NCBI GenBank assembly: GCA_002104945.1
Contig: MCFH01000020.1
Location: forward strand, 620,001-684,000
Length of the DNA stretch: 64,000 nt
Source of the DNA: Piromyces finnis finn
Lineage: Eukaryota; Fungi; Neocallimastigomycota
Direction of reading: 5' to 3'
Program-made: the position numbers and the translations under genes
Part shown: piece by piece, positions 8,617 to 54,500 of the stretch
How the letters are laid out: every line of letters starts with the position of its first letter
Position numbering within the stretch: the stretch's first letter is position 1
The notes under the pieces: model-generated
Database searches by the model: none
The model's input: the letters and a program-made list of their open reading frames with translations, nothing else
What the model was told of the DNA's origin: nothing

Positions 8617-9492
8617 TTTTAAAAATTACTAATTCCATTAAAATTAAAAATTTAATTTAAAATATTTATGATAAATAAATGATAATTTTAGTTTAATATA
8701 GTGTTAAAGTTTTATTTTGTTTATCATTATAATATTTAAATGTAAAACTGTAGAATGGATATTTTTTATTACATTTCTTTTTATTAAAATATATAGGTTT
8801 ATTTATATATATATATATACTATATCAATTTTTATATTTTGTTTTTCTATACTTTAAATATAAAAATACATATAAATAATAAATACTTTTCTATTTCAAA
8901 AATGAGAAGATTAAATTTATTTCATTGTCACTTTTAAAAACAAAATTAACTATATTTTGTAATTGGAAATGCAATTTTATTTTTAAAACTTCTTTTTTTT
9001 TTTTTTTATTATTTTTATTGCTATTATATTAAATTCTTAATAAAAATTGTATAGATAAAATTTGTTAAAATTTAATAGAAAAAAAATATATTAAATTTTT
9101 GTATCACCAAAACTAATATATAAAATATATAAAATAGAAATAAAAAAAATTTTAAATAAAATAATATTTCTATAATGAAAATGATACTAAAAAAAAGGTA
9201 TACAGGACATATTAACAAATTACAGAAAAAAAAAAAAAAAATAAAAAAGGATGTATTTTAAAATTTAATTTAATTGATAAATATATATATATTTAATTGC
9301 ATGGTATAATATTTTTCCTTTAATTACTAATATCAATGTAAAAGTAAAAAATATAGATAAAAATTGAAATTGAATTTAATAATAGTACATAAATATTTGA
9401 CTTAAATGTAAATAATAAAGGTATATTAATATATAATCATCCATAGATAAATGGTTCAATATATATACGGTTTTCCCTTAAAATTGTAATTT

Positions 9493-36157: not shown

Positions 36158-40975
<4,818 letters not shown>

Positions 40976-42225
40976 ATTTTCTTTCTTTATAAAAAAAATT
41001 ATGATAAAAAATAATTATTAAATTCCTTTTTCTTTTATTTAATATATATTAATGTATTGTTATCATAGTTTTACTTTTTTTTTTTTTATCTTTATATTAT
41101 TTAAAATTAATGGGTATAAAATATTTATTTCTGATGGATTTACTATACTTTTTTTTTTTAACAGATATTAATTCTTTTTGATATAATGTTAAAAGACAAA
41201 TAATAGAATTAAATTAAATGTTATTTATTTTATTATTGGGTATTATTATATATTAATTACAAATAAATAAAAGTTAATTAAAACAATAATTTAAAATATA
41301 TATATTTTATAAAGAAATATTAAAAATATTAAAATGTATTATTTTAAAAAAAAAAAAGTTTTTTTTTTTTTTTATTATTACCTTTTTATGTATTAAATCT
41401 TTAAAATTACACCAATAATTTATTATATTATTTAATAATTTTTTTATTAAAATATTTTTTAAAATTATGAAAAGTAAAAAAGAAAATGAAAAAAAAGTAA
41501 TATTTTTTGTAACTTTATAAAAAGGTTTATAATTTAAATTATGAAAAGTTTTTATTATTCTTTCTCTCTCTCTCTCTCTCTTTTTATTTTTTCTCATTTT
41601 TCTCATTATAATTTATTTTACATTAAAATTAGTCTTTTAAAACAACATTCACTCTGTAGATTTATCCTATTAAAAATTTTATATAAATCATAAAAGTTTA
41701 TTTATATATAAAATAAAAATTAAAAAATGATTTAAAATCTTTTTTTTTTTTTCCCGTACTTTTGATAAAATTTTTTAGGTCTATTTACCATAAAAAAAAT
41801 AATTTTATTTAGGTAAAAAAAAAAAAAAACTTTTTTGTTTTTTAGATTATTTTTTTTATTTTTTTTAAAAAAAAAAAAGGACATCTCTTTATTACAGAAA
41901 AAAAAAAAGTTTTGTAATTCTTATATTTTTACATTTATAAGGTATGTGTATATTATAAAATTTTAGAATTAAAAAAAAAAAAAATCTATCATCCAAATTA
42001 TTTAAAAGGATGAAACTATAAAAATATCTCGAATTCCTAAAATAATTATTAATTAAAAACAATTGTTTAATTGAATAAATAATTTAAATTATAATTTTTT
42101 TTTTTCAATAAAAAAAATATAAACATTAAAATTTATTGTATATTAAAATGGTATAATAATAATAACAATTAAAATGAAATGTAATTGATTTGTTGATAAA
42201 GAAAAAAAAAAAAAAATATAAAAAA

Positions 42226-44474
42226 ATGGTTGAAAAGGATGAGATAGTTATAAGCAAGGAGGAATCACTTGAAAATCCAACTTTACAAAACCCAAACAAA
42301 TCACCAAACAAATCACCAAGTAAATCTCCAAACAAATCACCAAGTAAATCACCAAGTAAATCACCAAGTAAATCTCCTGAAAAATCACCTGAAAAATCAC
42401 CTGAAAAATCACCTGAAAAATCACTGGAAAAATCACCAAGTAAATCACTTAAAGAACAATCAACTCCAAAAAAAGCATCTCCAAATAAATGTGAAAATAA
42501 AGAATCTAAAATTTCACCATTCAAAACACCAGAAAAATCTTCCCCAAAAAAATTTATAAAAAGCAATTCCCCAAAAGTGGATGACTCACCAATGCTTAAT
42601 ACTAGAAATCTTGTAAATAAATGGGAAGACATAAAAAAAGACAATGATAAATTAGCAAAAGCAACAAAATATGAAAATGTGAAATCCGAAAAAAGAAAAT
42701 CTACTTTTGGTTCAAGGGATTCATCTACAACATTCACACCAATTTCAAATTTCCTTAGTTCCGAAACAAATAAAAAGGGAATCACTTTAGATGAAACAAA
42801 ATTAAAGGATCATATACCAGAAATTACAAAAAAATTTTCAATGAAAGATAAAAGAATAAGAGAAAATATTAAAAGATTTAACCAATCTTACAATACTGCA
42901 AATATTGATTTAAGAGAAAATGAAAAAAAAATTGTTTCCGTAAAACCTACCAAAAAAGAAAAGCGTGTATATATAGAAGATGATGACGATGAAGATAAAG
43001 TTCAACGCTCAAAGAGAGTAAAAGTAAGTGAATTAGATAAAAATGGAAACACTTCTATTTGGCACAGAATTAATTCAGCAATATGTTCACTTAAGGAAAC
43101 TCTAAAATCAAAAACTGAAGAAAAAACTGTTGAAAACACTACAGGAAAAGAAAATGAAAGCTTTGTTATTACACCAACAGTTAAAAATCAGGAAATTAAA
43201 AAACTCGACCGTCTTAATGAAGGAACATGTTTGAATATATTTAATCCTTCCGTAAATAAATCTACAATACCAATATACCTAAGATTACGTAGAAGCAGTT
43301 CAAATATTAAAGAGGATAATTCAATAACAAATAATTTTGCAAAGTCTAATACCAAACCAGAATGGGTCAATAAATTATATATGGTTATTAGCAATGAAAC
43401 CTCTGCTCCAAAATTGTTTGATGTAAGTAATTATATTATATTATATTTGTAAATGACACTCGCAAAATTCACATTAACAAATAAATAATCAATGTAATTA
43501 TCATTCAATTTTACTAATATATATTTTATTATATAAATTAATATTTCTATTATAAATATTATAAATATTAATAAATAATGAATAATTAATAAAAAAGGTA
43601 CCAGTTCATTGGACTTCCCTTTCATCTGAAATGGTATATATTTTAAATGTTTCAGGTGAAGCATTAATTCAATTTAATGGATCAGATAGTCTTAACAGAG
43701 ATAAAGACTACGCTAAAAGAATTTGTAAAAGAATCAGTTTAAATGATAATGTTCCAGATATCTTTGAAATTGAGCAAGAAGAATCATATGAAGATAATAC
43801 TGTTGTATTACAACTTTTCTGGAAAGCATTAGAATTAGAAAATTATAAAAAGGAAGAAAGAAAAAAAATTATTTTAAAAAATGACGAACAAAACTTAAAA
43901 ACTGTTTTAAAAGAAAATAAAAATGAAATAGATATTGAAAAGGCAATTTATATCTACAGGTAATAATTATTTATATAAGAAATTTTAAAGTCATCCAAAT
44001 ATTTTATTTTAATTATTGGAATCTACATTATATAAATTATATTTTTTATAACGTCATCATTATATGGTTTGATTATTAATGGATTTATTATATAAAATAG
44101 AATTAATGAGCAAACCAACTCATTAGATTTAATACACAATGGTACTTTCCCAACTTACAGATGCTTAAATTCAAATACATCAATGATTTTTGATTTTGCT
44201 GGTGAAGTTTATTTATGGCAAGGAAAGAACTCCAGCTTAAATGCTAGAAGTATCGGAATTAAATTTGCACAGGTAATAAAAATAATTAATAAATAGTAAT
44301 AATTATTATTTTAAATTTTAATAAATGAAATTGTTTTATTGTTATAATTAATGAAATTAGAAAATTTTCAGTGATTATAAAAGACCATCCTGGGCAAGTT
44401 TAAGAAAAATTAATGAAGGACATGAACAAATTCTTTTCCAAGAAAAATTTAAAGATAGTTTTTACTTCTTTTAA
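42226..44474 (+). CDS. Supervillin/gelsolin-like protein with KSP-repeat N-terminus and only two gelsolin-like repeats; 3' end uncertain
   Basis: Exons 42226-43422, 43598-43959, 44101-44272 and 44361-44474 join in frame. MIFDFAGEVYLWQGK and RPSWASLRKINEGHEQILFQEKFKD resemble supervillin repeat G2 ([37 protein letters not shown]). Confidence 0.72.
42290..42450 (+). repeat. 12-bp tandem repeat encoding (KSPx)n
   Basis: aaatcacc[aagt/tgaa/aaac] units; the protein reads KSPNKSPSKSPNKSPSKSPSKSPSKSPEKSPEKSPEKSPEKSLEKSPSK. Confidence 0.92.
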
Positions 44475-45007: not shown

Positions 45008-45048
<41 letters not shown>

Positions 45049-45049
45049 A

Positions 45050-45103
45050 TTATTTAGGTTTATTACAGTCATCAAGTATAATAGCATCTTTTTCAAACCT
45101 ATC

Positions 45104-45148
<45 letters not shown>

Positions 45149-48100
45149 TGTTAAAATATATCTATATTATTATGAATGTTGTATATAATAAATAATACAA
45201 TATTTACTTTTTAAAGTAATTTTCTGACAAAAGACCCTTAATTGAATTATGACTTAAATTTCTTTAATAATTAAAAAGATAATTAATATTTATATATAAT
45301 TTTGTATAAATTTTTCATATTAATTATCACAAATTAATAATAATTAAATGTATGGTAATAATTACAATATTTCAAGGTTTATTAAGTTTTCGATTTTATC
45401 AGAAATTGAACCGGTTAATTTATTGTTATTTAAACATCTAATAAAAGAAACATAATTTCATTATTTTATTAGAATGCTTCTTATTTCAGCTATTATATAT
45501 AAATAAATACGGAAACTTACAATTTCTTAAGCTTTATTAATTTATAGATAGTTTCAGGAATATCACCTTCAAAGGAATTAAAACTTAAATCACTATGTAA
45601 TTATTGATATTTTTTAGTATTTCTATTATTAATATCTAATGATAATTACTAAAAAATATTTAAATAAATATTTACAGAATTTCAAGATTTATTAATTTTC
45701 CTATCGAGGATGGTATACTTCCAGATAATTCATCTGATGATAAGTTTCTATATTTTGAGATTAAAATATTAAAATATAGTTAGTATAAAAAATAATAATA
45801 AATTAGGTATATAGTATAAATTTATTATTATCACATACAACACTGTTAAGGATTCAAAATGACCAATAGTTGATGGTAATATACCATTAAATGAATTATT
45901 ATTAATAATACTGTATAGTTAAAAATATTAAAGAATTAGGGTTTTTTTGTATAATACATAAAAACAATTATTGATTCTTATATATATAATATTTACATTT
46001 CTGTACTTTGATTCATTGTTTGAAGCAACCTATTTACATAAATTAGATTTAAACAATTTATACAGAAAAAGATTAATTTATATATATTAATTATATAATA
46101 TTGTGAAATTGAAATACTATAAAAAAAATACTTACAAATAAATTAATGCAAAATCTCTAAAGTTTTTATTAAAATATTCTGGTGAAGAAAACATTTTTGA
46201 TATACTATGAGATAAGGAATAATGCTCTACACAAATTAAGCGATAAAGTTCATCAAAAGAATATACCATATCATCTGGATTACACTTTGTTAAATCAGAG
46301 GAAGCGTTTGAATCAATTGGAGACTTTAAATCTAAATCATTTACCTTATTTGTAATTTTTTCTTTCAATTTTTCTCTTAACTCTTGGTATAAATATCTAA
46401 GATTTCTTCTTGATGTAAAGGTATCTTTAAATAATTTTTCATTAAATTTACCTGATTCTTTATCAACAAATTTTGTTTTTATTTCTTTAACTAATTCAGA
46501 TGAGTTCTTTTTTGACCACATTGCACTAATGTTATTATCACTTTGTTCTTTATTTCTATAATTTATTGATGTAGTATATTTTTTATGAGTTAAATCTTCT
46601 GATGATTTTCCATTATCATTATTTTTTGGTCTCTCATATGCAGTAGCATGAAGAATGTTGGATTCATCGATTTCAAACATTACATTTACACAAATTTTAC
46701 CTGCTAATTCTAAAGTAATGTTTGGAACTACTAAACTACCAATCATTTTATTAAACAATACACAAAAACTATCTCCTTCAAAAATATTGAAGGAAAGTTG
46801 GTTTTGATAGTCTACAGAAGTATAAAATGCACGTTCAAATGGTTTAGTAGTTGGGATCCTTGTACCACTTGGAATAATACATGAAAAAGATAATCCACCT
46901 GATTCTACACCAAGATTCATACTTACAACATCTTCAATTATATTTTTTGTCATATTTGTTTTTTTAACAGGTGTTTTATCGATATTTACACTTTCTTCTT
47001 GATCCTGATTATTAGCTTCCCTATCAAGTTGATCTTCTTCTTCAGGAGAGAATTTACTTAAACCTAAACTGTTGGCATAAATAGAAGCACCTCTTGCAAC
47101 AACTTCTGTATCACTCGAATGATCTAATGGTACTTTTCCATCAAAATAATTTTTTACTAAATCAATGATACTTGGAATATTTGAGGAGCCACCTACCATA
47201 ATTACACAATCGATATTTTTTTTTTCAACTTTATCCTTCAATTTTTCAAAGAAATTATCTAAGCAAACAATAATACGATCATATATATCTTTACATATTT
47301 CTATAAATTTTTCTCCCGTTAATTCGATAAAATATTCATCTTCGTCATCTTCATCTTCATCCTCCTTTTCCTCAAATCCACCTAAATCTGAAATATCAAC
47401 TTCAACAGACATACGCTTTCCTCCAGAAAGTCGTATTTTAGCTTCTTCACATTTATTATAGAGTTGATGTCTTAATTTTGGTTTCTTCTCAGCTAATAAA
47501 CCTAAATCAACATTAAATTGTTCCTTTGTTTGTTTAATAACATAATTAATAATTGTAGAAGTAATATCTTCTCCTCCTAAAAATGTATCACCACCATATC
47601 CAATAATTTTTACTGGTTCATCATTTGAAAATTTTGCTACTGTAAGATCAGTGGTACCACCACCAATATCACAAACTAAATAGGTTTTTGAATTGTTATC
47701 TACAGGGGATTGTGGATTAATACCTCGATCAATTCTTTTTTTATAAGCATAATAAATAATAGCAGCAGATGGTTCATTCAATAAAGCTAATACATGTAAT
47801 TTTGCCTCTTCCGCTGCTTTCTTTGTCTCAGCTCTTTGTTCCTGAGTGAAATAAGCAGGTACTGTTATAACGCAGTATACTTCGGGGTTTTCATTATCTA
47901 ATGCTCCACAATGTACAATATCTTCACGAATGGATTTTAATATGTCTACACTAACATCACTTGGTTTTTTAAAGCCAATTTCACTACCATCCGATTTATT
48001 GACAATTCTATAAACTGGAAAATTATCTTTATTTATTATTTCTACTGTTGAATTTTCAGCGACTTTTTTTACTATCTTATCATCATAAGATGTACCAATT

Positions 48101-48330
48101 AATCTCTTTGAATTAAATATAGTCTGTTTAGTATATTTATAGGCTTGAATTTTCGCTTCATAACCAACTAATGCACTACCATCTTTGTCATATCTTACTA
48201 CAGATGGTTTGTTTTCTTTTGCCATACCTTTTGTTTTTACTAATTGAACAATATCATTTTCATAAATTGAGGAACTCGAAAAACATGTTCCCAAATCTAT
48301 ACCCGCATATATTATTTTTTCATTACTCAT
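45050..48330 (-). CDS. Atypical Hsp70 (NBD + SBD-beta) fused to C-terminal leucine-rich repeats; 8 exons, about 872 aa
   Basis: Exon 1 (48330-46136) has GIDLGT, SKRLIG, ITVPAYF, NEPSAA, DIGGGTTD, GDTFLGGED, VGGSSNIP and an SBD-beta. A GTAAGT donor at 46135 is followed by exons 46029-45997, 45910-45839, 45747-45676, 45592-45521, 45437-45366, 45261-45208 and 45098-45050. All are GT-AG and phase 2, and the frame stays open to TAA at 45052-45050. Confidence 0.85.
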
Positions 48331-48987: not shown

Positions 48988-50870
48988 ATGGATCCATTAT
49001 ATGAAAAAATAAAAAAATCAATTACTTTTGTAGCAATTGATATTGGTTCTTATTCAACAAAATCATTATCAAGTCATTCACCCCTTAATAAAACTTTTGA
49101 AAATCAAATCGATTCCGCAACAAGATATCAATTATATGATATTCCTTCCAACAATATTTATGTTAAAAATTATAATAAAGATGAAGAGCAAACCAATAAA
49201 ACCGACAGTAATACCGTAATTAGTAAAAGAGATGAAATTATTAAATATGATTATTTAAATATACGTCCTAAATGCTTAATTGATAAAATAAAACTCTACA
49301 ATGTTAATTATAGTAATACACCACAGTACTATGATAAAATAGAAAATGATGAAATTTGTACAAATGGTATTTGTATTGACAATAATTCAGGATTCATAGG
49401 ATATAAAATAAAACCACCAAATCAGAAAAATACTTATTTTATTTCATATAACTATCATTTACAAAGATATATTGACCTTTACATGAATGAATTGCTAGAA
49501 AAAATGAATCCTCAAAACCAAAATAAAAAAATAATTTTAATATTTACCATCCCCCTATTTGAAAATGATGCTAATAAAGCAACAAAAGATGAATCATATA
49601 AATATTTTCATAATCTTAATAAAAAAAGATATATTGATAGTATTAATAAAGGTATATCTAAATATAAAAATGTTATTGCAGGTGTAGTATATGTTACTGA
49701 AATAGAAAGTTTAATACAACATTGGAAAAATAATTTTGAATATCAAATGCTATCTTTACAAAATTATTGTTCAAAGCCTGAACAAAAATCTATTCCAGAT
49801 TATCAGAAAAAAGTATTATTTTTAGATTTTGGATGTTATCATAGTAAATTCTATCTTACACAACTCTCATCAAATACTCTTCATAGAGGTACCAATAAAG
49901 AAAATAAAATTGATGATAATATCATTTTGGAATGGGACATTTTAAATATTTCTGGTGAACAAATTAATAATGATATTATTCAATTATTACTAAAGAAGTA
50001 TCCAGATATTAAAAAAAGTTATAGTAAAGCCTTGGGCAAATATAAGATTTGGAGAACAGTAGATCAGGAAATTAAACGTGCTTTCACTAATCCAAATGTA
50101 AAAGACTTTTCATGTGAAATTTTAAATGCTGGTGATTATTATGATTTAATGATTAATCGAGCCGAAATTAATGATATATTAAATCCATATTACCAACTAT
50201 TAATAAATAAAATAGAAGAACTTTTAATAAAATATAGTATAGAACAAAAGTAAGAAAAAACATAGAATAATTTATTATGAATTAACCTATTTATTTATTG
50301 TTAAATATTAACAAAATAATTCTACATTTAATATTATTTAATGTAATATTATAACATTCTTTTAATATATACAATATATTATATTATAGTGAATTGGAAG
50401 TATGCATTTGTGGTGATGGTGCTTTAATATTTGAAAATTATATAATGAATACTTTAAATTCAAACCCAATAATAAAAAATAATATTCATTCAGTAACATG
50501 GAATAAAGTTAATACTCTTCATGGTAGTTTATTAAAATTACATGAAAATATTAATAAATTTGTTACAACAATTAGAAAAAGAAGAATTAGTACTCTCTCA
50601 GAAAAACGAAGTATATCTAAAATTTTATATAATCAACATTCTTTTGATGCTATTATTAGTATGGAAAGTAACTTAAAGCAAATTCTTCATCCTTCTCAAA
50701 AAATAGAATTTGGTTTTAACTCAAATTATAATACTTCCCAAAACAAACTTACTGATAAGGGAAAATTAAAAGCAGTATCGGATAGTTCTATATCGGAATA
50801 TACTACTGATGATATTATTAATTTTAAAGATATAAATGATGTTATTAATTATTTGAATACAACTATATGA
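48988..50870 (+). CDS. Highly degenerate Hsp70/actin-fold protein (probable pseudo-ATPase); 2 exons, about 580 aa
   Basis: Exons 48988-50249 and 50390-50870 join in frame (GTAAG...TAG). Hsp70 motifs appear in the correct order: VAIDIGSYS, LIFTIP, VTEIESLI, VLFLDFG, NISGEQIN, EIKRAFT...INRAEINDI, VCICGDG. Confidence 0.75.
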
Positions 50871-51587: not shown

Positions 51588-54500
51588 AATTAATATTTCT
51601 ATCTTTTTTTTTATTATTTATACATATACTTATTTATTACATTTATAATCGGTCCAAAGATAATACCAATAAAAGAAGAGGTTATGATATGTTGTACAAT
51701 TCTAAATATTAGTCTATAATTGTATATATGTATTCCTTTATAAACAGTCAATGTAAAAACAATCAATTCTAATAAGCTTAAAAAAAGATCATAATCCTCT
51801 GTTATACATTTATATGTCCAATAACCTTCATCTTTCTGAAAAATAATATTGTTTTCACTCCTACTATTTCTAAAATATGCAAATATTGAAATTAATGTAA
51901 GAGCAGCAACAAAAATTAAATATAAAAAAATCGTTTCTATAAAAAATGAGTGAGCATCGTCAATTGTAATAATTAAAAATTCATTTTTCATGCTTTCTTC
52001 CTTAGCTACTGATGAAACTGAAATGGAACTTTTTGACTTTACATATCTGATAATATTTTTTACACTTCCATTAACCCCTGTTATATGAGAAGCCCTATTT
52101 TTTTTTTTACTGTTAATTATATTTACTAGTATATCACTTTCTATGTTTTTATTATATTCGCTTGAATTTTCATTTTGTAATTTTGCTAATGATGAATTAT
52201 TTAGTGAATGTAATAAAGCATTTTCTCTGTTTAATATTGCATTTTCATCAATTAATGAATTTAGCATTATCCCAAGACTTGCTCTTTCTAATTCTTCTTG
52301 GTCTTGATTTTTAAACTCAACTCCCAATATCATACTTAAAGAAACAATCGTATAAATAATAAATACCATAATACCAATTCCAAAATGTTTGAAACAAAAA
52401 TAAAGCATCCATTGAATGTAATTGGTATAAGTAATAAAATAATTACTTATAAAATATGTTATTATTCCAACAATAAAAATAAGGATTTTAAAAATACCTA
52501 TATCATCAATAATTTGTTTATCCCGATTAATAATAATATATGCCGTAAATAATACTACAATGAAAATGCTTATACTTTCAAACAAAACTATTATCTTATT
52601 TAATTTACTATTTTTAAAATGAATATACAAAATTTATCAAATAAAAAAGCTAGTTATTAGATATTTCATGGTTAAATATGATTGTTATAATTATATAAAA
52701 GTTTTTTTTTTTTTTTTTTCAAATTATTCTAAATATAATTTACCCAAAATTAACTAATTTTTTCTTTTCACAATATTCGCCTTCCCATCCTGAAAGACAT
52801 TCACATATATTATTTTCTTTATTATTTACAAATTCATTAATATATGGTCTACATATAGCTGTCGATGAAATAGGACAGGTATCTTTACAAACAGGTATTT
52901 CACAAGACAAAATTCCATTCTTATACATTTTAATTTGGTATTTGTCACATGCTAAAATATTGATTCTAATTGGATCAAATTTCATCATTATTTCTCCATC
53001 GTAATTTTTAACTTTTACTTCTAATATATAATTGTTTGGTTTTCCAAAAATTTGTAATTCACTTAGTTCACATACACCTTAAAAAGCCAAGATGAATAAT
53101 AAAAAATTAAAACTAATGATATTTGTTAAGATTTCTATTGTATTTATATATTTTATATTTTTACCTTTTGTAAAATAGCATTCATTCCCTTTAACCATTG
53201 TGACTTTTTCATCATCATTATCTTGATACCCCTGGCTATTTATTTCTACTAAATCCAGATTTAAGCTTAACATGGAATAATATTTTATTATGTCATTATA
53301 TAATTGATCAAATTCATCATATAATGTAAAAATTAAAGGTAAATAATCTCCTGGTCTTAATTCTTTATTTTTAATATCTAATTTTTTATTTAGTGTTATA
53401 TATGATGGTTTTGAAGCATAATCATTTATATAACCACTTATTGTATTATTTCCTATTTCAAATGAATTAATATCAAATAAATTCTTATTTATTGAAAATG
53501 GTGAATAAATACCACCGCCAATGATTCCTGCACTATTATATATAATACTATTATTTTCAGTTTTTGCTAAATATAAATTACTATACTCTGAGTATATAGC
53601 CCCTCCAAAATTCTCAACAACATTATTTCTAAATATATTATTTTTAATTTGAATATTACTTAAATTATTACTGATAGTATTGTTGCTATCCTTTAAATAT
53701 AATGCACCTCCATTAAGTGATTTATTATCACTAAATATATTTGAAATAAGATTAAGATCCATTGAAACGATTTCATCAATACAGCTTATATTAATAATAT
53801 TTATATATGAATTAATTAATTAATTAATTAATTAATTAATATATTCTTTTGTTATTGTACTTGGTTATTTAAAATAATAATTAAATAATTACATTGCACC
53901 ACCATTACTTTGACAATGATTATTTGAAAATTCGGAATTTTCTATTGACAATAATAAATTGTTACTAAAATGAATACTACCACATTCCAATTTATTTAAA
54001 TTTCTATTTTCATTGAAATTTGAATTGGAAATCGATATTATTGACTATATATGTATATAAAGAGTATTAAATAATTAGATCATTCAATTTTTGGTATAAA
54101 ATCAAAAATAATATAATATATATTTTTTCGGCTTATTACTTTTGTGGATAAATCTTTAATAATTGAACCATATGATCTTACGCTTTTTATATTTACATTA
54201 TTCATATTAATTTCACTTATATCACCTTTTATTTTTATAAAGGGTCCATTTGATATACTATTTTTAATTGAAACATTATTAATATTTATAGTTTTTTTGT
54301 CCTCTCCTGAATCATATAATAAAAATGATGTTCTATCAGTGTCACCAACACATTGAATATTTTCTACTTCCATATTTTCAATATTTACATTATTTTGAAA
54401 AAATTGAAATACAGCTATGTAATTAGTTGTAATGTCTGTTAATTTAATTTTATTCAAAGAATAAAATGAATCTTCTTTAAATAAACTACTGGATAAACTG

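What the first reader, a model, noticed from the sequence alone, without database searches (positions are those of the whole stretch)
45050..48330. Hsp70 whose lid/EEVD tail is replaced by leucine-rich repeats (missed by the ORF track)
Seen: the 732-aa ORF stop lies inside a GTAAGT donor. Splicing continues in frame through IIINNNSFNGILPSTIGHFESLTV, LNLSSDELSGSIPSSIGKLINLEI, LDLSFNSFEGDIPETIYKLIKLKK, LCLNNNKLTGSISDKIENLINLEI and LNLSHNSIKGLLSEN, then FEKDAIILDDCNKPK*. Established: these fit the 24-aa plant-type LRR consensus LxLxxNxLxGxIPxxIxxLxxL. Residues equivalent to Hsc70 D10, T13, K71, E175, D199, T204 and D206 are all present, so the ATPase is probably active. There is an insert of about 35 aa before the interdomain linker. 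Inference: the LRRs provide target specificity or ligand sensing coupled to Hsp70 allostery.
Basis: partly seen in the sequence, partly recalled or inferred. Interest (0 to 1): 0.82.

Follow-up and report, generated by a model that had tools for sequence, protein, structure and literature searches.

The report
Hsp70 chaperone fused to LRR domain
Anaerobic gut fungi make a conserved, very divergent Hsp70 chaperone whose usual tail is replaced by a short plant-type leucine-rich-repeat domain; the combination appears in no paper found here and its partner and function are unknown.

Summary
The window is Piromyces finnis. The 732-aa ORF (48330-46136, minus strand) ends at a TAA lying across a GTAAGT donor. 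Seven phase-2 GT..AG introns of 83-109 nt join it in frame to a 33-nt mini-exon, four 72-nt exons (one LRR each), a 54-nt exon and a final 49-nt exon. The product is 872 aa.

Intron-free contigs with UTRs from relatives (896-901 aa) match the window block by block at exactly these boundaries. In Neocallimastix californiae such a contig matches the species' own genome at 99.9-100%. dN/dS is 0.03-0.08 for the Hsp70 part and 0.08-0.13 for the LRR part. A downstream neighbour is syntenic.

The gene is a real fusion, conserved across gut-fungal genera. P. finnis has lost one 69-nt LRR exon.

- The lid is not replaced. About 160 conserved, predicted-helical residues sit between the SBD-beta and the LRRs. 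Only the tail and EEVD motif are gone.
- Public records already hold the fusion: complete in Neocallimastix, cut after LRR2 in P. finnis.
- The LRRs are conserved, which points to a fixed partner rather than variable ligand sensing.

Function is inferred only. I obtained no transcript data from P. finnis itself. A first-stage note on this same stretch exists in the scan; its follow-up was withheld.

The parts
46136..48330 (-). Exon 1, aa 1-732. It holds the Hsp70 NBD, the disordered insert, the linker, the SBD-beta and the conserved helical region. The last codon is split (phase 2).
   Evidence: ORF. Pfam HSP70 E 4e-81. cDNA contigs L001 and L002 align to 48330-46136 exactly.
47056..48330 (-). 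Nucleotide-binding domain (aa ~1-425) with all catalytic residues. Hsc70 R171 is replaced by Ala.
   Evidence: PDB phmmer matches residues 9-420. Invariant columns. VIA Z 48.5 to BiP-ATP. Alignment.
46945..47055 (-). Lineage-specific acidic/polar insert (aa ~426-462) before the interdomain linker, predicted disordered.
   Evidence: Alignment gap against canonical Hsp70s. pLDDT <50. dN/dS 0.25-0.77.
46606..46944 (-). Interdomain linker (NIIEDV) and substrate-binding beta-sandwich (aa ~463-575).
   Evidence: PDB phmmer second stretch 464-574. Model aligned to BiP and DnaK through residue ~596. dN/dS 0.03-0.07.
46136..46605 (-). Conserved, predicted-helical, lid-like region (aa ~576-732). No sequence match to known lids.
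   Evidence: No Pfam hit. Helices. Atlas structural alignment reaching residue 758. dN/dS 0.06-0.08.
46030..46135 (-). Intron 1 (106 nt). Its GTAAGT donor creates the TAA that ends the 732-aa ORF.
   Evidence: Absent from cDNA contigs of relatives.
45997..46029 (-). 33-nt mini-exon encoding (L)LLQTMNQSTE(I). Part of a hydrophobic helix just before LRR1. It holds an in-frame ATG.
   Evidence: Nearly identical peptide in all orthologues. L001 aligns to it.
45839..45910 (-). LRR1 exon, 72 nt (IIINNNSFNGILPSTIGHFESLTV).
45676..45747 (-). LRR2 exon, 72 nt (LNLSSDELSGSIPSSIGKLINLEI). The NCBI model of P. finnis stops just after it by reading into the next intron.
45521..45592 (-). LRR3 exon, 72 nt (LDLSFNSFEGDIPETIYKLIKLKK).
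45366..45437 (-). LRR4 exon, 72 nt (LCLNNNKLTGSISDKIENLINLEI).
45262..45365 (-). Intron 6 (104 nt). Relatives carry an extra 69-nt LRR exon here (LMLNNN.LE.EIP.S.EKI.LKK). No remnant is left in P. finnis.
   Evidence: cDNA bases 2520-2588 of L001 have no counterpart in the window. tblastn finds the exon in L003 and L006-L008 but not in the window.
45208..45261 (-). 54-nt exon, the start of the last (irregular) LRR (LNLSHNSIKGLLSENYFK).
45050..45098 (-). Final exon (KFEKDAIILDDCNKPK plus TAA), followed by a T-rich tract.
   Evidence: The same C-terminus and a 3' UTR are present in the cDNA contigs of relatives.

Best explanation
SHOWN. This is one eight-exon gene of Piromyces finnis (nine exons in relatives). 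It encodes an 872-aa cytosolic-looking protein with no signal peptide or KDEL. The order of parts is: a very divergent but complete Hsp70 core (ATPase domain with all catalytic residues, a disordered insert, the linker and the substrate-binding beta-sandwich), then a conserved helical region of about 160 aa, then five plant-type 24-residue LRRs (six in relatives) where the usual flexible tail and EEVD motif would be. The fusion is transcribed as one mRNA in relatives, is single-copy and syntenic, is kept under strong purifying selection in every part, and is found only in anaerobic gut fungi (Piromyces, Neocallimastix, Pecoramyces and unnamed lineages).

INFERRED. It still cycles ATP and grips hydrophobic peptide segments like an Hsp70. 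It has lost docking of TPR co-chaperones because EEVD is absent. Its J-protein coupling may be altered, because Hsc70 R171 (DnaK R167) is Ala in all members. The small, conserved LRR solenoid serves as a built-in adaptor that ties the chaperone to one fixed partner, client class or cellular site. Confidence is about 0.93 for the architecture and about 0.4 for the mechanism. The figure given here is a blend of the two.
For: Exon model. cDNA-like contigs L001 and L002 match the window at the predicted exon edges. L005 and L009 match the N. californiae genome at 99.9-100% with the introns removed and UTRs present. Many 896/901-aa uninterrupted ORFs sit on 2.9-3.3-kb contigs from JGI and Logan. 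Pfam HSP70 plus LRR families hit the orthologues. dN/dS by domain is 0.03-0.13. A downstream neighbour is syntenic at 58% identity. Catalytic residues are invariant. The model matches BiP-ATP with Z 48.5 and rmsd 2.5-2.6 over ~500 residues. The LRR solenoid has pLDDT 87-99 and best matches plant LRR-RK ectodomains, for example SERK1 with TMt 0.65. Concave-face LRR positions vary less (7/29) than other non-core positions (24/54), Fisher p 0.096, which is suggestive only. The R171-equivalent is Ala in all members.
Against: I obtained no transcript of P. finnis itself. The reads call was lost to a filter, junction and fragment searches were blank, and the four runs that hold the stretch are not on record as RNA. 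The deposited P. finnis and Pecoramyces models both stop after LRR2, so retention of that intron cannot be excluded. P. finnis lacks one LRR exon. The helical region is modelled at low to moderate confidence. No partner, localisation or activity is known. The mechanism rests on residue conservation and on analogy.
Confidence: 0.62

Rival explanations
1. Sensor reading. The LRR domain perceives a ligand and transmits this to the Hsp70 ATPase, or the reverse. The protein would then be an NLR-like nucleotide switch built on an Hsp70 core rather than a tethered chaperone.
For: The order 'nucleotide-binding module followed by a C-terminal LRR' resembles NLRs. The plant-type LRRs resemble ligand-binding receptor ectodomains. 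The ATPase residues are intact.
Against: The gene is single-copy per genome, and its LRR is under strong purifying selection (dN/dS 0.08-0.13), unlike typical immune receptors. There are only 5-6 repeats. No effector or signalling domain was found. No data bear on allosteric coupling.
Confidence: 0.17
2. Two genes. The Hsp70 ends at the 46132 stop, and the LRR exons form a separate small gene starting at the in-frame ATG of the mini-exon (MNQSTE...).
For: An in-frame ATG lies in exon 2. The TAA ends a long ORF. There are no P. finnis transcript data.
Against: Continuous cDNA-like contigs in at least three related lineages read straight through the junction. Only 106 AT-rich bases would separate the two genes. 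The peptide across the junction is almost invariant. The NCBI model for P. finnis itself makes the same join.
Confidence: 0.03
3. In P. finnis the LRR tail is decaying. One LRR exon is already lost, and the mature product is effectively truncated (791 aa, as deposited, or 732 aa).
For: The 69-nt exon is missing. The deposited model is truncated after LRR2, as it is in Pecoramyces.
Against: All remaining exons are in frame with intact GT..AG sites. The lost exon is symmetric (phase 2 on both sides, 69 nt), so its loss removes exactly one repeat. The P. finnis LRR region differs from relatives mostly at synonymous sites (dN/dS 0.08-0.13). With a phase-2 GTAA donor, truncation at 'CTG TAA' is what an unspliced or wrongly modelled intron would give.
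Confidence: 0.06
4. Assembly or annotation chimera of unrelated Hsp70 and LRR sequences.
For: None beyond the rarity of the combination.
Against: The same architecture appears in independent genome assemblies (P. finnis, N. californiae, N. lanati, metagenome contigs L006-L008) and in independent transcript-like contigs.
Confidence: 0.01

Closest known systems
Canonical Hsp70s (Hsc70/HSPA8, BiP, DnaK, Ssb)
   Same: The actin-like ATPase domain has every catalytic residue. A linker ends in DV. The beta-sandwich substrate-binding domain keeps hydrophobic pocket positions. Helices follow it. The model superposes on ATP-state BiP (Z 48.5).
   Different: Only about 30% identical to any of them, with no closer relative outside gut fungi. 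There are extra acidic and polar inserts. The linker is NIIEDV instead of LLLLDV. The R171-equivalent is Ala. The lid has no sequence similarity. There is no G/P-rich tail and no EEVD. An LRR domain is attached at the C-terminus.
Hsp70s fused to other repeat modules (Hsp70-TPR proteins, e.g. the chlorophyte Atlas cluster and P0103)
   Same: An Hsp70 core carries a protein-protein interaction repeat domain in the same chain (row 4; P0103). This is a precedent for built-in adaptors.
   Different: The repeat type differs (TPR, not LRR), the lineage differs, and there is no detectable common origin. I did not study those proteins further.
Plant LRR receptor-kinase / receptor-like protein ectodomains (SERK1/2, HAESA, ERL, BRI1)
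   Same: The 24-residue LxLxxNxLxGxIPxxIxxLxxL repeats are shared, at 35-45% identity. The fold match is close: SERK1 rmsd 1.8 A over 132 columns with TMt 0.65. From my own knowledge, not tested here, SERK genes also have one repeat per 72-nt exon.
   Different: There is no signal peptide, no Cys-pair N- or C-caps, no transmembrane helix and no kinase. The setting is presumably cytosolic. Some Bacteroidota proteins are just as similar, so the origin is open.
NLR / STAND receptors (NB-LRR)
   Same: The order is a nucleotide-binding module followed by a C-terminal LRR.
   Different: The NTPase is an Hsp70/actin fold, not a STAND P-loop. There is no effector domain. The gene is single-copy and conserved. 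The resemblance is by analogy only.

Membership tests
Hsp70 (PF00012) | Actin-like nucleotide-binding domain with catalytic residues (Hsc70 D10, T13, K71, E175, D199, T204, D206) | tested here: met
   Pfam E 4e-81. D12, T15, K75, E186, D221, T226 and D228 are invariant in 65 sequences. Offsets to Hsc70 chains.
Hsp70 (PF00012) | Substrate-binding beta-sandwich after a conserved interdomain linker | tested here: met
   Second HMMER stretch 464-574 against HSP70A and Ssb1. The fold aligns to BiP and DnaK through ~596. The linker is partly altered (NIIEDV vs LLLLDV).
Hsp70 (PF00012) | Alpha-helical lid (SBD-alpha) | tested here: inconclusive
   No sequence match beyond residue ~575. Helices are predicted at pLDDT 50-80. 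The Atlas model aligns to a full-length Hsp70 through residue 758. The part-search of the Atlas gave TM <0.5 only.
Eukaryotic cytosolic Hsp70 (Hsc70/Ssa type) | C-terminal EEVD motif for TPR co-chaperones | tested here: not met
   The C-terminus is ...LDDCNKPK in P. finnis and ...CN(K/I)PK in relatives.
Eukaryotic cytosolic Hsp70 (Hsc70/Ssa type) | Arg at the J-domain contact (Hsc70 R171 / DnaK R167) | tested here: not met
   VLALLNEP instead of VLRIINEP in all family members. The role of this residue is from my knowledge of DnaK-DnaJ work.
Plant-specific-type LRR | Tandem 24-residue repeats LxxLxLxxNxLxGxIPxxLxxLxx forming a solenoid | tested here: met
   Repeat register. Pfam LRR_1, LRR_4, LRR_8 and LRR_14 hits. 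pLDDT 87-99 solenoid. Best fold matches are plant LRR-RK ectodomains.
Plant LRR-RLK / RLP ectodomain | Signal peptide, Cys-pair LRRNT/LRRCT caps (PF08263), membrane anchor | tested here: not met
   The N-terminus is MSNEKIIYAGIDLGT. There is no PF08263 hit. A single Cys lies near the C-terminus. No hydrophobic anchor is present.
NLR / STAND NTPase | NACHT/NB-ARC P-loop NTPase | tested here: not met
   Only HSP70, MreB and FtsA (actin fold) families hit.

The most novel reading that the evidence does not exclude
The Hsp70-LRR protein is a new kind of ATP-driven switch. A conserved LRR reads out a specific ligand or partner and gates, or is gated by, the Hsp70 cycle. This would be an NLR-like logic built on a chaperone core, invented once in anaerobic gut fungi.
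Probability: 0.12. Interest if true: 0.85.

Novelty: new variant of a known kind. Interest (0 to 1): 0.55.

Why it matters
Hsp70s normally get their specificity from separate J-proteins and from TPR co-chaperones that dock on the EEVD tail. Here the tail is replaced by a dedicated protein-binding solenoid, and the fusion has been kept intact across gut-fungal genera. It would be a natural example of a chaperone hard-wired to one target. It also offers a way to ask how Hsp70 allostery tolerates a folded C-terminal domain and the loss of the canonical J-contact arginine. Two practical points follow. The deposited P. finnis (791 aa) and Pecoramyces (782 aa) gene models stop after the second LRR, earlier than the exon structure supports. 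And the loss of a single symmetric exon in P. finnis shows how repeat number changes in one-repeat-per-exon genes.

Tried and rejected
So there is no read-level evidence.

2. Run search: four runs hold 0.57-0.70 of the sampled words. That is close to my own estimate of the exon share of the stretch (about 0.77), so they could be RNA assemblies. None is on record as RNA, so I do not count them.

3. Exhaustive representative search with the full 896-aa orthologue: all 149 listed hits other than the query's own cluster were giant LRR proteins with summed repeat scores. It cannot say whether other Hsp70+LRR fusions exist. It shows only that no relative of the Hsp70 part scores above ~328 bits outside the family's own cluster. 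A query without the LRR would have served better.

4. Exact scan for the P. finnis-specific exon 6/7 junction in JGI metagenome contigs: 0 hits. A degenerate scan across junctions 1 and 2 found only Neocallimastix and L002-type cDNA contigs.

5. Word search with the junction-spanning piece of the NCBI model, looking for short fragments: nothing from P. finnis.

6. Full-length AF2 modelled the LRR badly because the alignment was shallow there. I redid the C-terminal part with an LRR alignment.

7. Atlas searches by features: no usable hit.

8. Literature: four searches found no paper on an Hsp70-LRR fusion.

9. A phylogeny placing the Hsp70 core among Hsp70 classes was not built. The sequences in hand lack Hsp110, Ssz and bacterial DnaK representatives, and the branch is very long.

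10. I checked whether the head-to-head neighbour is a conserved partner. It is adjacent in a close relative (L006) but was not found within 6 kb in Neocallimastix.
Full report
WHAT IS THERE

The window has 16-28% GC. The 732-aa ORF is 100% identical to NCBI ORX50767.1, an 'actin-like ATPase domain-containing protein' of Piromyces finnis, an anaerobic gut fungus.

The ORF runs 48330-46132 on the minus strand. Its TAA is formed by bases 2-4 of a GTAAGT donor (TT|GTAAGT). The exons are 48330-46136, 46029-45997 (33 nt), 45910-45839, 45747-45676, 45592-45521, 45437-45366 (72 nt each), 45261-45208 (54 nt) and 45098-45050. All seven introns are GT..AG, phase 2, 83-109 nt and 9-19% GC.

IS THE SPLICING REAL?

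I lost the single read-laying run.

Evidence came from relatives instead. The word search returned three full-length clusters that combine Pfam HSP70 with LRR families:
- P0002: 896 aa, 91% identical over the ORF.
- P0005: 896 aa, identical in Neocallimastix californiae and N. lanati.
- P0007: 901 aa.

Their encoding contigs are short and carry one uninterrupted ORF:
- L001: 2691 nt.
- L002: 2896 nt, with a 39-nt 5' UTR and a 3' UTR of about 150 nt.
- L005: 3229 nt, with UTRs on both sides.

Aligned to the window, L001 and L002 break into blocks whose ends are exactly the predicted exon ends. L005 matches the N. californiae genome locus L003 at 99.9-100% in the same block pattern, with the introns missing. 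So does a second contig from another sample, L009. An intron-free copy of an intron-bearing gene, with UTRs, is what a transcript assembly looks like. I could not check the sample types.

The clusters hold further 896/901-aa ORFs on 2.9-3.3-kb contigs from JGI and Logan, beside 738-aa ORFs on longer (genomic) contigs. The downstream convergent neighbour (window 42190-43449, plus strand) is 58% identical to the gene next to the Neocallimastix orthologue. A WSD-motif gene follows in both. The loci are therefore orthologous.

SELECTION

Nei-Gojobori estimates between the P. finnis exons and the three cDNA-like CDSs:

| Region | dN/dS |
|---|---|
| ATPase domain | 0.03-0.06 |
| Beta-sandwich | 0.03-0.07 |
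| Residues 576-732 | 0.06-0.08 |
| LRR part plus tail | 0.08-0.13 |
| Insert 426-470 | 0.25-0.77 |

The LRR exons are coding sequence under constraint, not a silent fragment.

ONE DIFFERENCE IN P. FINNIS

All relatives have an extra 69-nt exon (LMLNNN.LE.EIP.S.EKI.LKK) between the exons at 45437-45366 and 45261-45208. It is present in the genomic loci L003 and L006-L008. In the window, the 104-nt intron at that position has no remnant of it. Both flanking introns are phase 2, so the loss removes exactly one repeat and keeps the frame. P. finnis therefore has five repeats, and the others have six.

DOMAINS

HMMER against PDB sequences matches residues 9-420 (ATPase domain) and 464-574 (beta-sandwich), and nothing after that.

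In a 65-sequence alignment, D12, T15, K75, E186, D221, T226 and D228 are invariant. By the offsets of the Hsc70 chains (query 9 = chain 7, with two single-residue gaps before K75) these are Hsc70 D10, T13, K71, E175, D199, T204 and D206.

Other features visible in the alignment:
- The Arg of VLRIINEP (Hsc70 R171, DnaK R167) is Ala in every family member. From my own knowledge this residue is a key J-domain contact.
- T14 is Cys.
- The linker reads NIIEDV instead of LLLLDV.
- There are acidic or polar inserts at about residues 200-212, 316-331, 426-462 and 572-600.

The AF2 model of P0002 is confident for residues 5-596. It superposes on ATP-state BiP with Z 48.5 and rmsd 2.5-2.6 over about 500 residues.

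THE LID

I do not think so.
- About 160 residues separate the beta-sandwich from the first LRR, and they are as constrained as the core.
- They are predicted as helices at P0002 residues 610-622, 633-661, 693-708 and 723-737, with pLDDT from about 40 to 80.
- Some DnaK alignments continue into model residues 644-666.
- The ESM Atlas model of P0005 aligns 598 residues spanning 1-758 to a 617-aa full-length Hsp70, with TM 0.88 by the target.
- There is no sequence similarity to lids, no Pfam hit, and no specific fold hit for the part alone.

So a divergent lid-like region is likely but not proven. What is clearly gone is the flexible tail with EEVD. The protein ends in ...LDDCNKPK.

THE LRR DOMAIN

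The repeats fit L-x-L-x-x-N-x-L-x-G-x-I-P-x-x-I-x-x-L-x-x-L-x-x in a 24-residue register, one per exon, with the intron inside the codon of the first Leu. Pfam LRR_1, LRR_4, LRR_8 and LRR_14 hit the orthologues.

A search with the LRR part finds plant LRR-RLKs and RLPs, and some Bacteroidota proteins, at 35-45% identity. Only the three gut-fungal clusters among the 120 listed also carry PF00012.

Folded with an LRR alignment, the domain is a solenoid at pLDDT 87-99. Its best PDB matches are plant receptor ectodomains (HAESA, ERL, SERK1/2, BRI1). For SERK1 the figures are rmsd 1.8 A over 132 columns and TMt 0.65.

There is no signal peptide, Cys-pair cap, membrane anchor or kinase. The hydrophobic helix FRDFALIYLLLQTM, just before LRR1, spans the exon 1/exon 2 junction and is nearly invariant. 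That fits one folding unit.

Across the orthologues, concave-face x positions vary in 7 of 29 cases against 24 of 54 for other non-core positions. Fisher p is 0.096, so this is only suggestive.

DISTRIBUTION AND NOVELTY

Orthologues occur in P. finnis, Piromyces sp. E2 (partial), N. californiae, N. lanati, Pecoramyces ruminantium (782-aa model) and unnamed lineages.

Outside them the best Hsp70 matches are at about 30% identity. In the exhaustive library, no relative of the Hsp70 part scores above about 328 bits. That search was otherwise swamped by giant LRR proteins, and it does not exclude independent Hsp70+LRR fusions elsewhere.

Four literature searches found no paper on such a fusion. 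The proteins are already in public databases as unnamed predictions. The Neocallimastix model is complete. The P. finnis and Pecoramyces models both stop after LRR2, where an unspliced phase-2 GTAA donor gives CTG-TAA. Hsp70 cores fused to TPR repeats exist (row 4; P0103), so a repeat adaptor on an Hsp70 has a precedent.

HOW IT LIKELY WORKS (INFERENCE)

The protein is most likely an active Hsp70 that binds hydrophobic segments. It cannot dock EEVD-dependent co-chaperones, and it may respond differently to J-proteins. A small LRR tethers it to one conserved partner or site.

Being single-copy with conserved LRRs argues against a diversifying receptor. An NLR-like sensor logic cannot be excluded, and I put it at about 0.12-0.17.

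The two-gene rival (start at the ATG in the mini-exon) is contradicted by the continuous cDNA-like contigs in relatives and by the P. finnis NCBI model. It was not tested on P. finnis RNA.

SURROUNDINGS

The divergently oriented 421-aa ORF at 48988-50250 (plus 50394-50870) is conserved head-to-head in a close relative (L006, 83% identity). It was not found within 6 kb of the Neocallimastix gene. Its likeness to an Hsp70 profile is weak: hhalign probability 13%, E 0.002, around the phosphate-2 region, and there is no Pfam hit. Earlier first-stage notes of this scan treat it as a pseudo-Hsp70 partner. My checks neither confirm nor exclude that.

Another note of the scan reports gut-fungal LRR families with one repeat per 69-nt exon. 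This hints that the LRR tail could have come from a resident exon pool. I did not test that.

Noticed in passing
window 45262-45365 (intron 6); L003 9400-9468; L006 ~8825-8893: P. finnis lacks the 69-nt LRR exon that all relatives have. It is a clean loss of one symmetric phase-2 exon, leaving five repeats instead of six. An assembly deletion cannot be excluded.
   Followed up: yes
window 48988-50250 and 50394-50870 (+): Divergently transcribed neighbour (421-aa plus 158-aa ORFs, an intron between them likely) with an N-terminal 'AIDIGSYSTK' motif. It has no Pfam hit and only a weak hhalign match to the Hsp70 phosphate-2 region. The head-to-head arrangement is conserved in a close relative but was not seen in Neocallimastix.
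   Followed up: partly
window 45593-45675 (intron 4); P0001 and P0400 C-termini: The deposited gene models of P. finnis (791 aa) and Pecoramyces ruminantium (782 aa) both stop at the intron after LRR2. There an unspliced phase-2 GTAA donor reads CTG-TAA. Either both models share an error or that intron is often retained.
   Followed up: partly
window introns 1, 2, 4, 5, 6, 7 of the gene: Six of the seven introns are phase 2 with GTAA donors, so retention of any of them gives a stop codon straight after the exon. In the close relative L006-L008 the intron-1 donor differs and its ORF reads on for 24 codons (756 aa). The stop-in-donor is therefore not itself conserved.
   Followed up: partly
window 42190-43449 (+) and 36740-37384 (-): The downstream neighbours are syntenic with Neocallimastix. 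The first is a gene 58% identical to the gelsolin-like (faint) neighbour of the orthologue. The second is a WAC/DDT/WSD-type chromatin-remodelling-factor gene.
   Followed up: partly
window 45012-45046 and 45105-45151: Long T runs of about 35-45 nt lie just after the stop codon and inside the last intron (read on the minus strand). They also give spurious low-complexity blast hits.
   Followed up: no
window 53082-53762 (-): An ORF with a weak Chlamydia-PMP repeat hit (E 1.8e-5). The homologous position in metagenome contig L007 also shows a faint Chlam_PMP gene.
   Followed up: no
They lie in the AT-rich intergenic region upstream of the gene.
   Followed up: no
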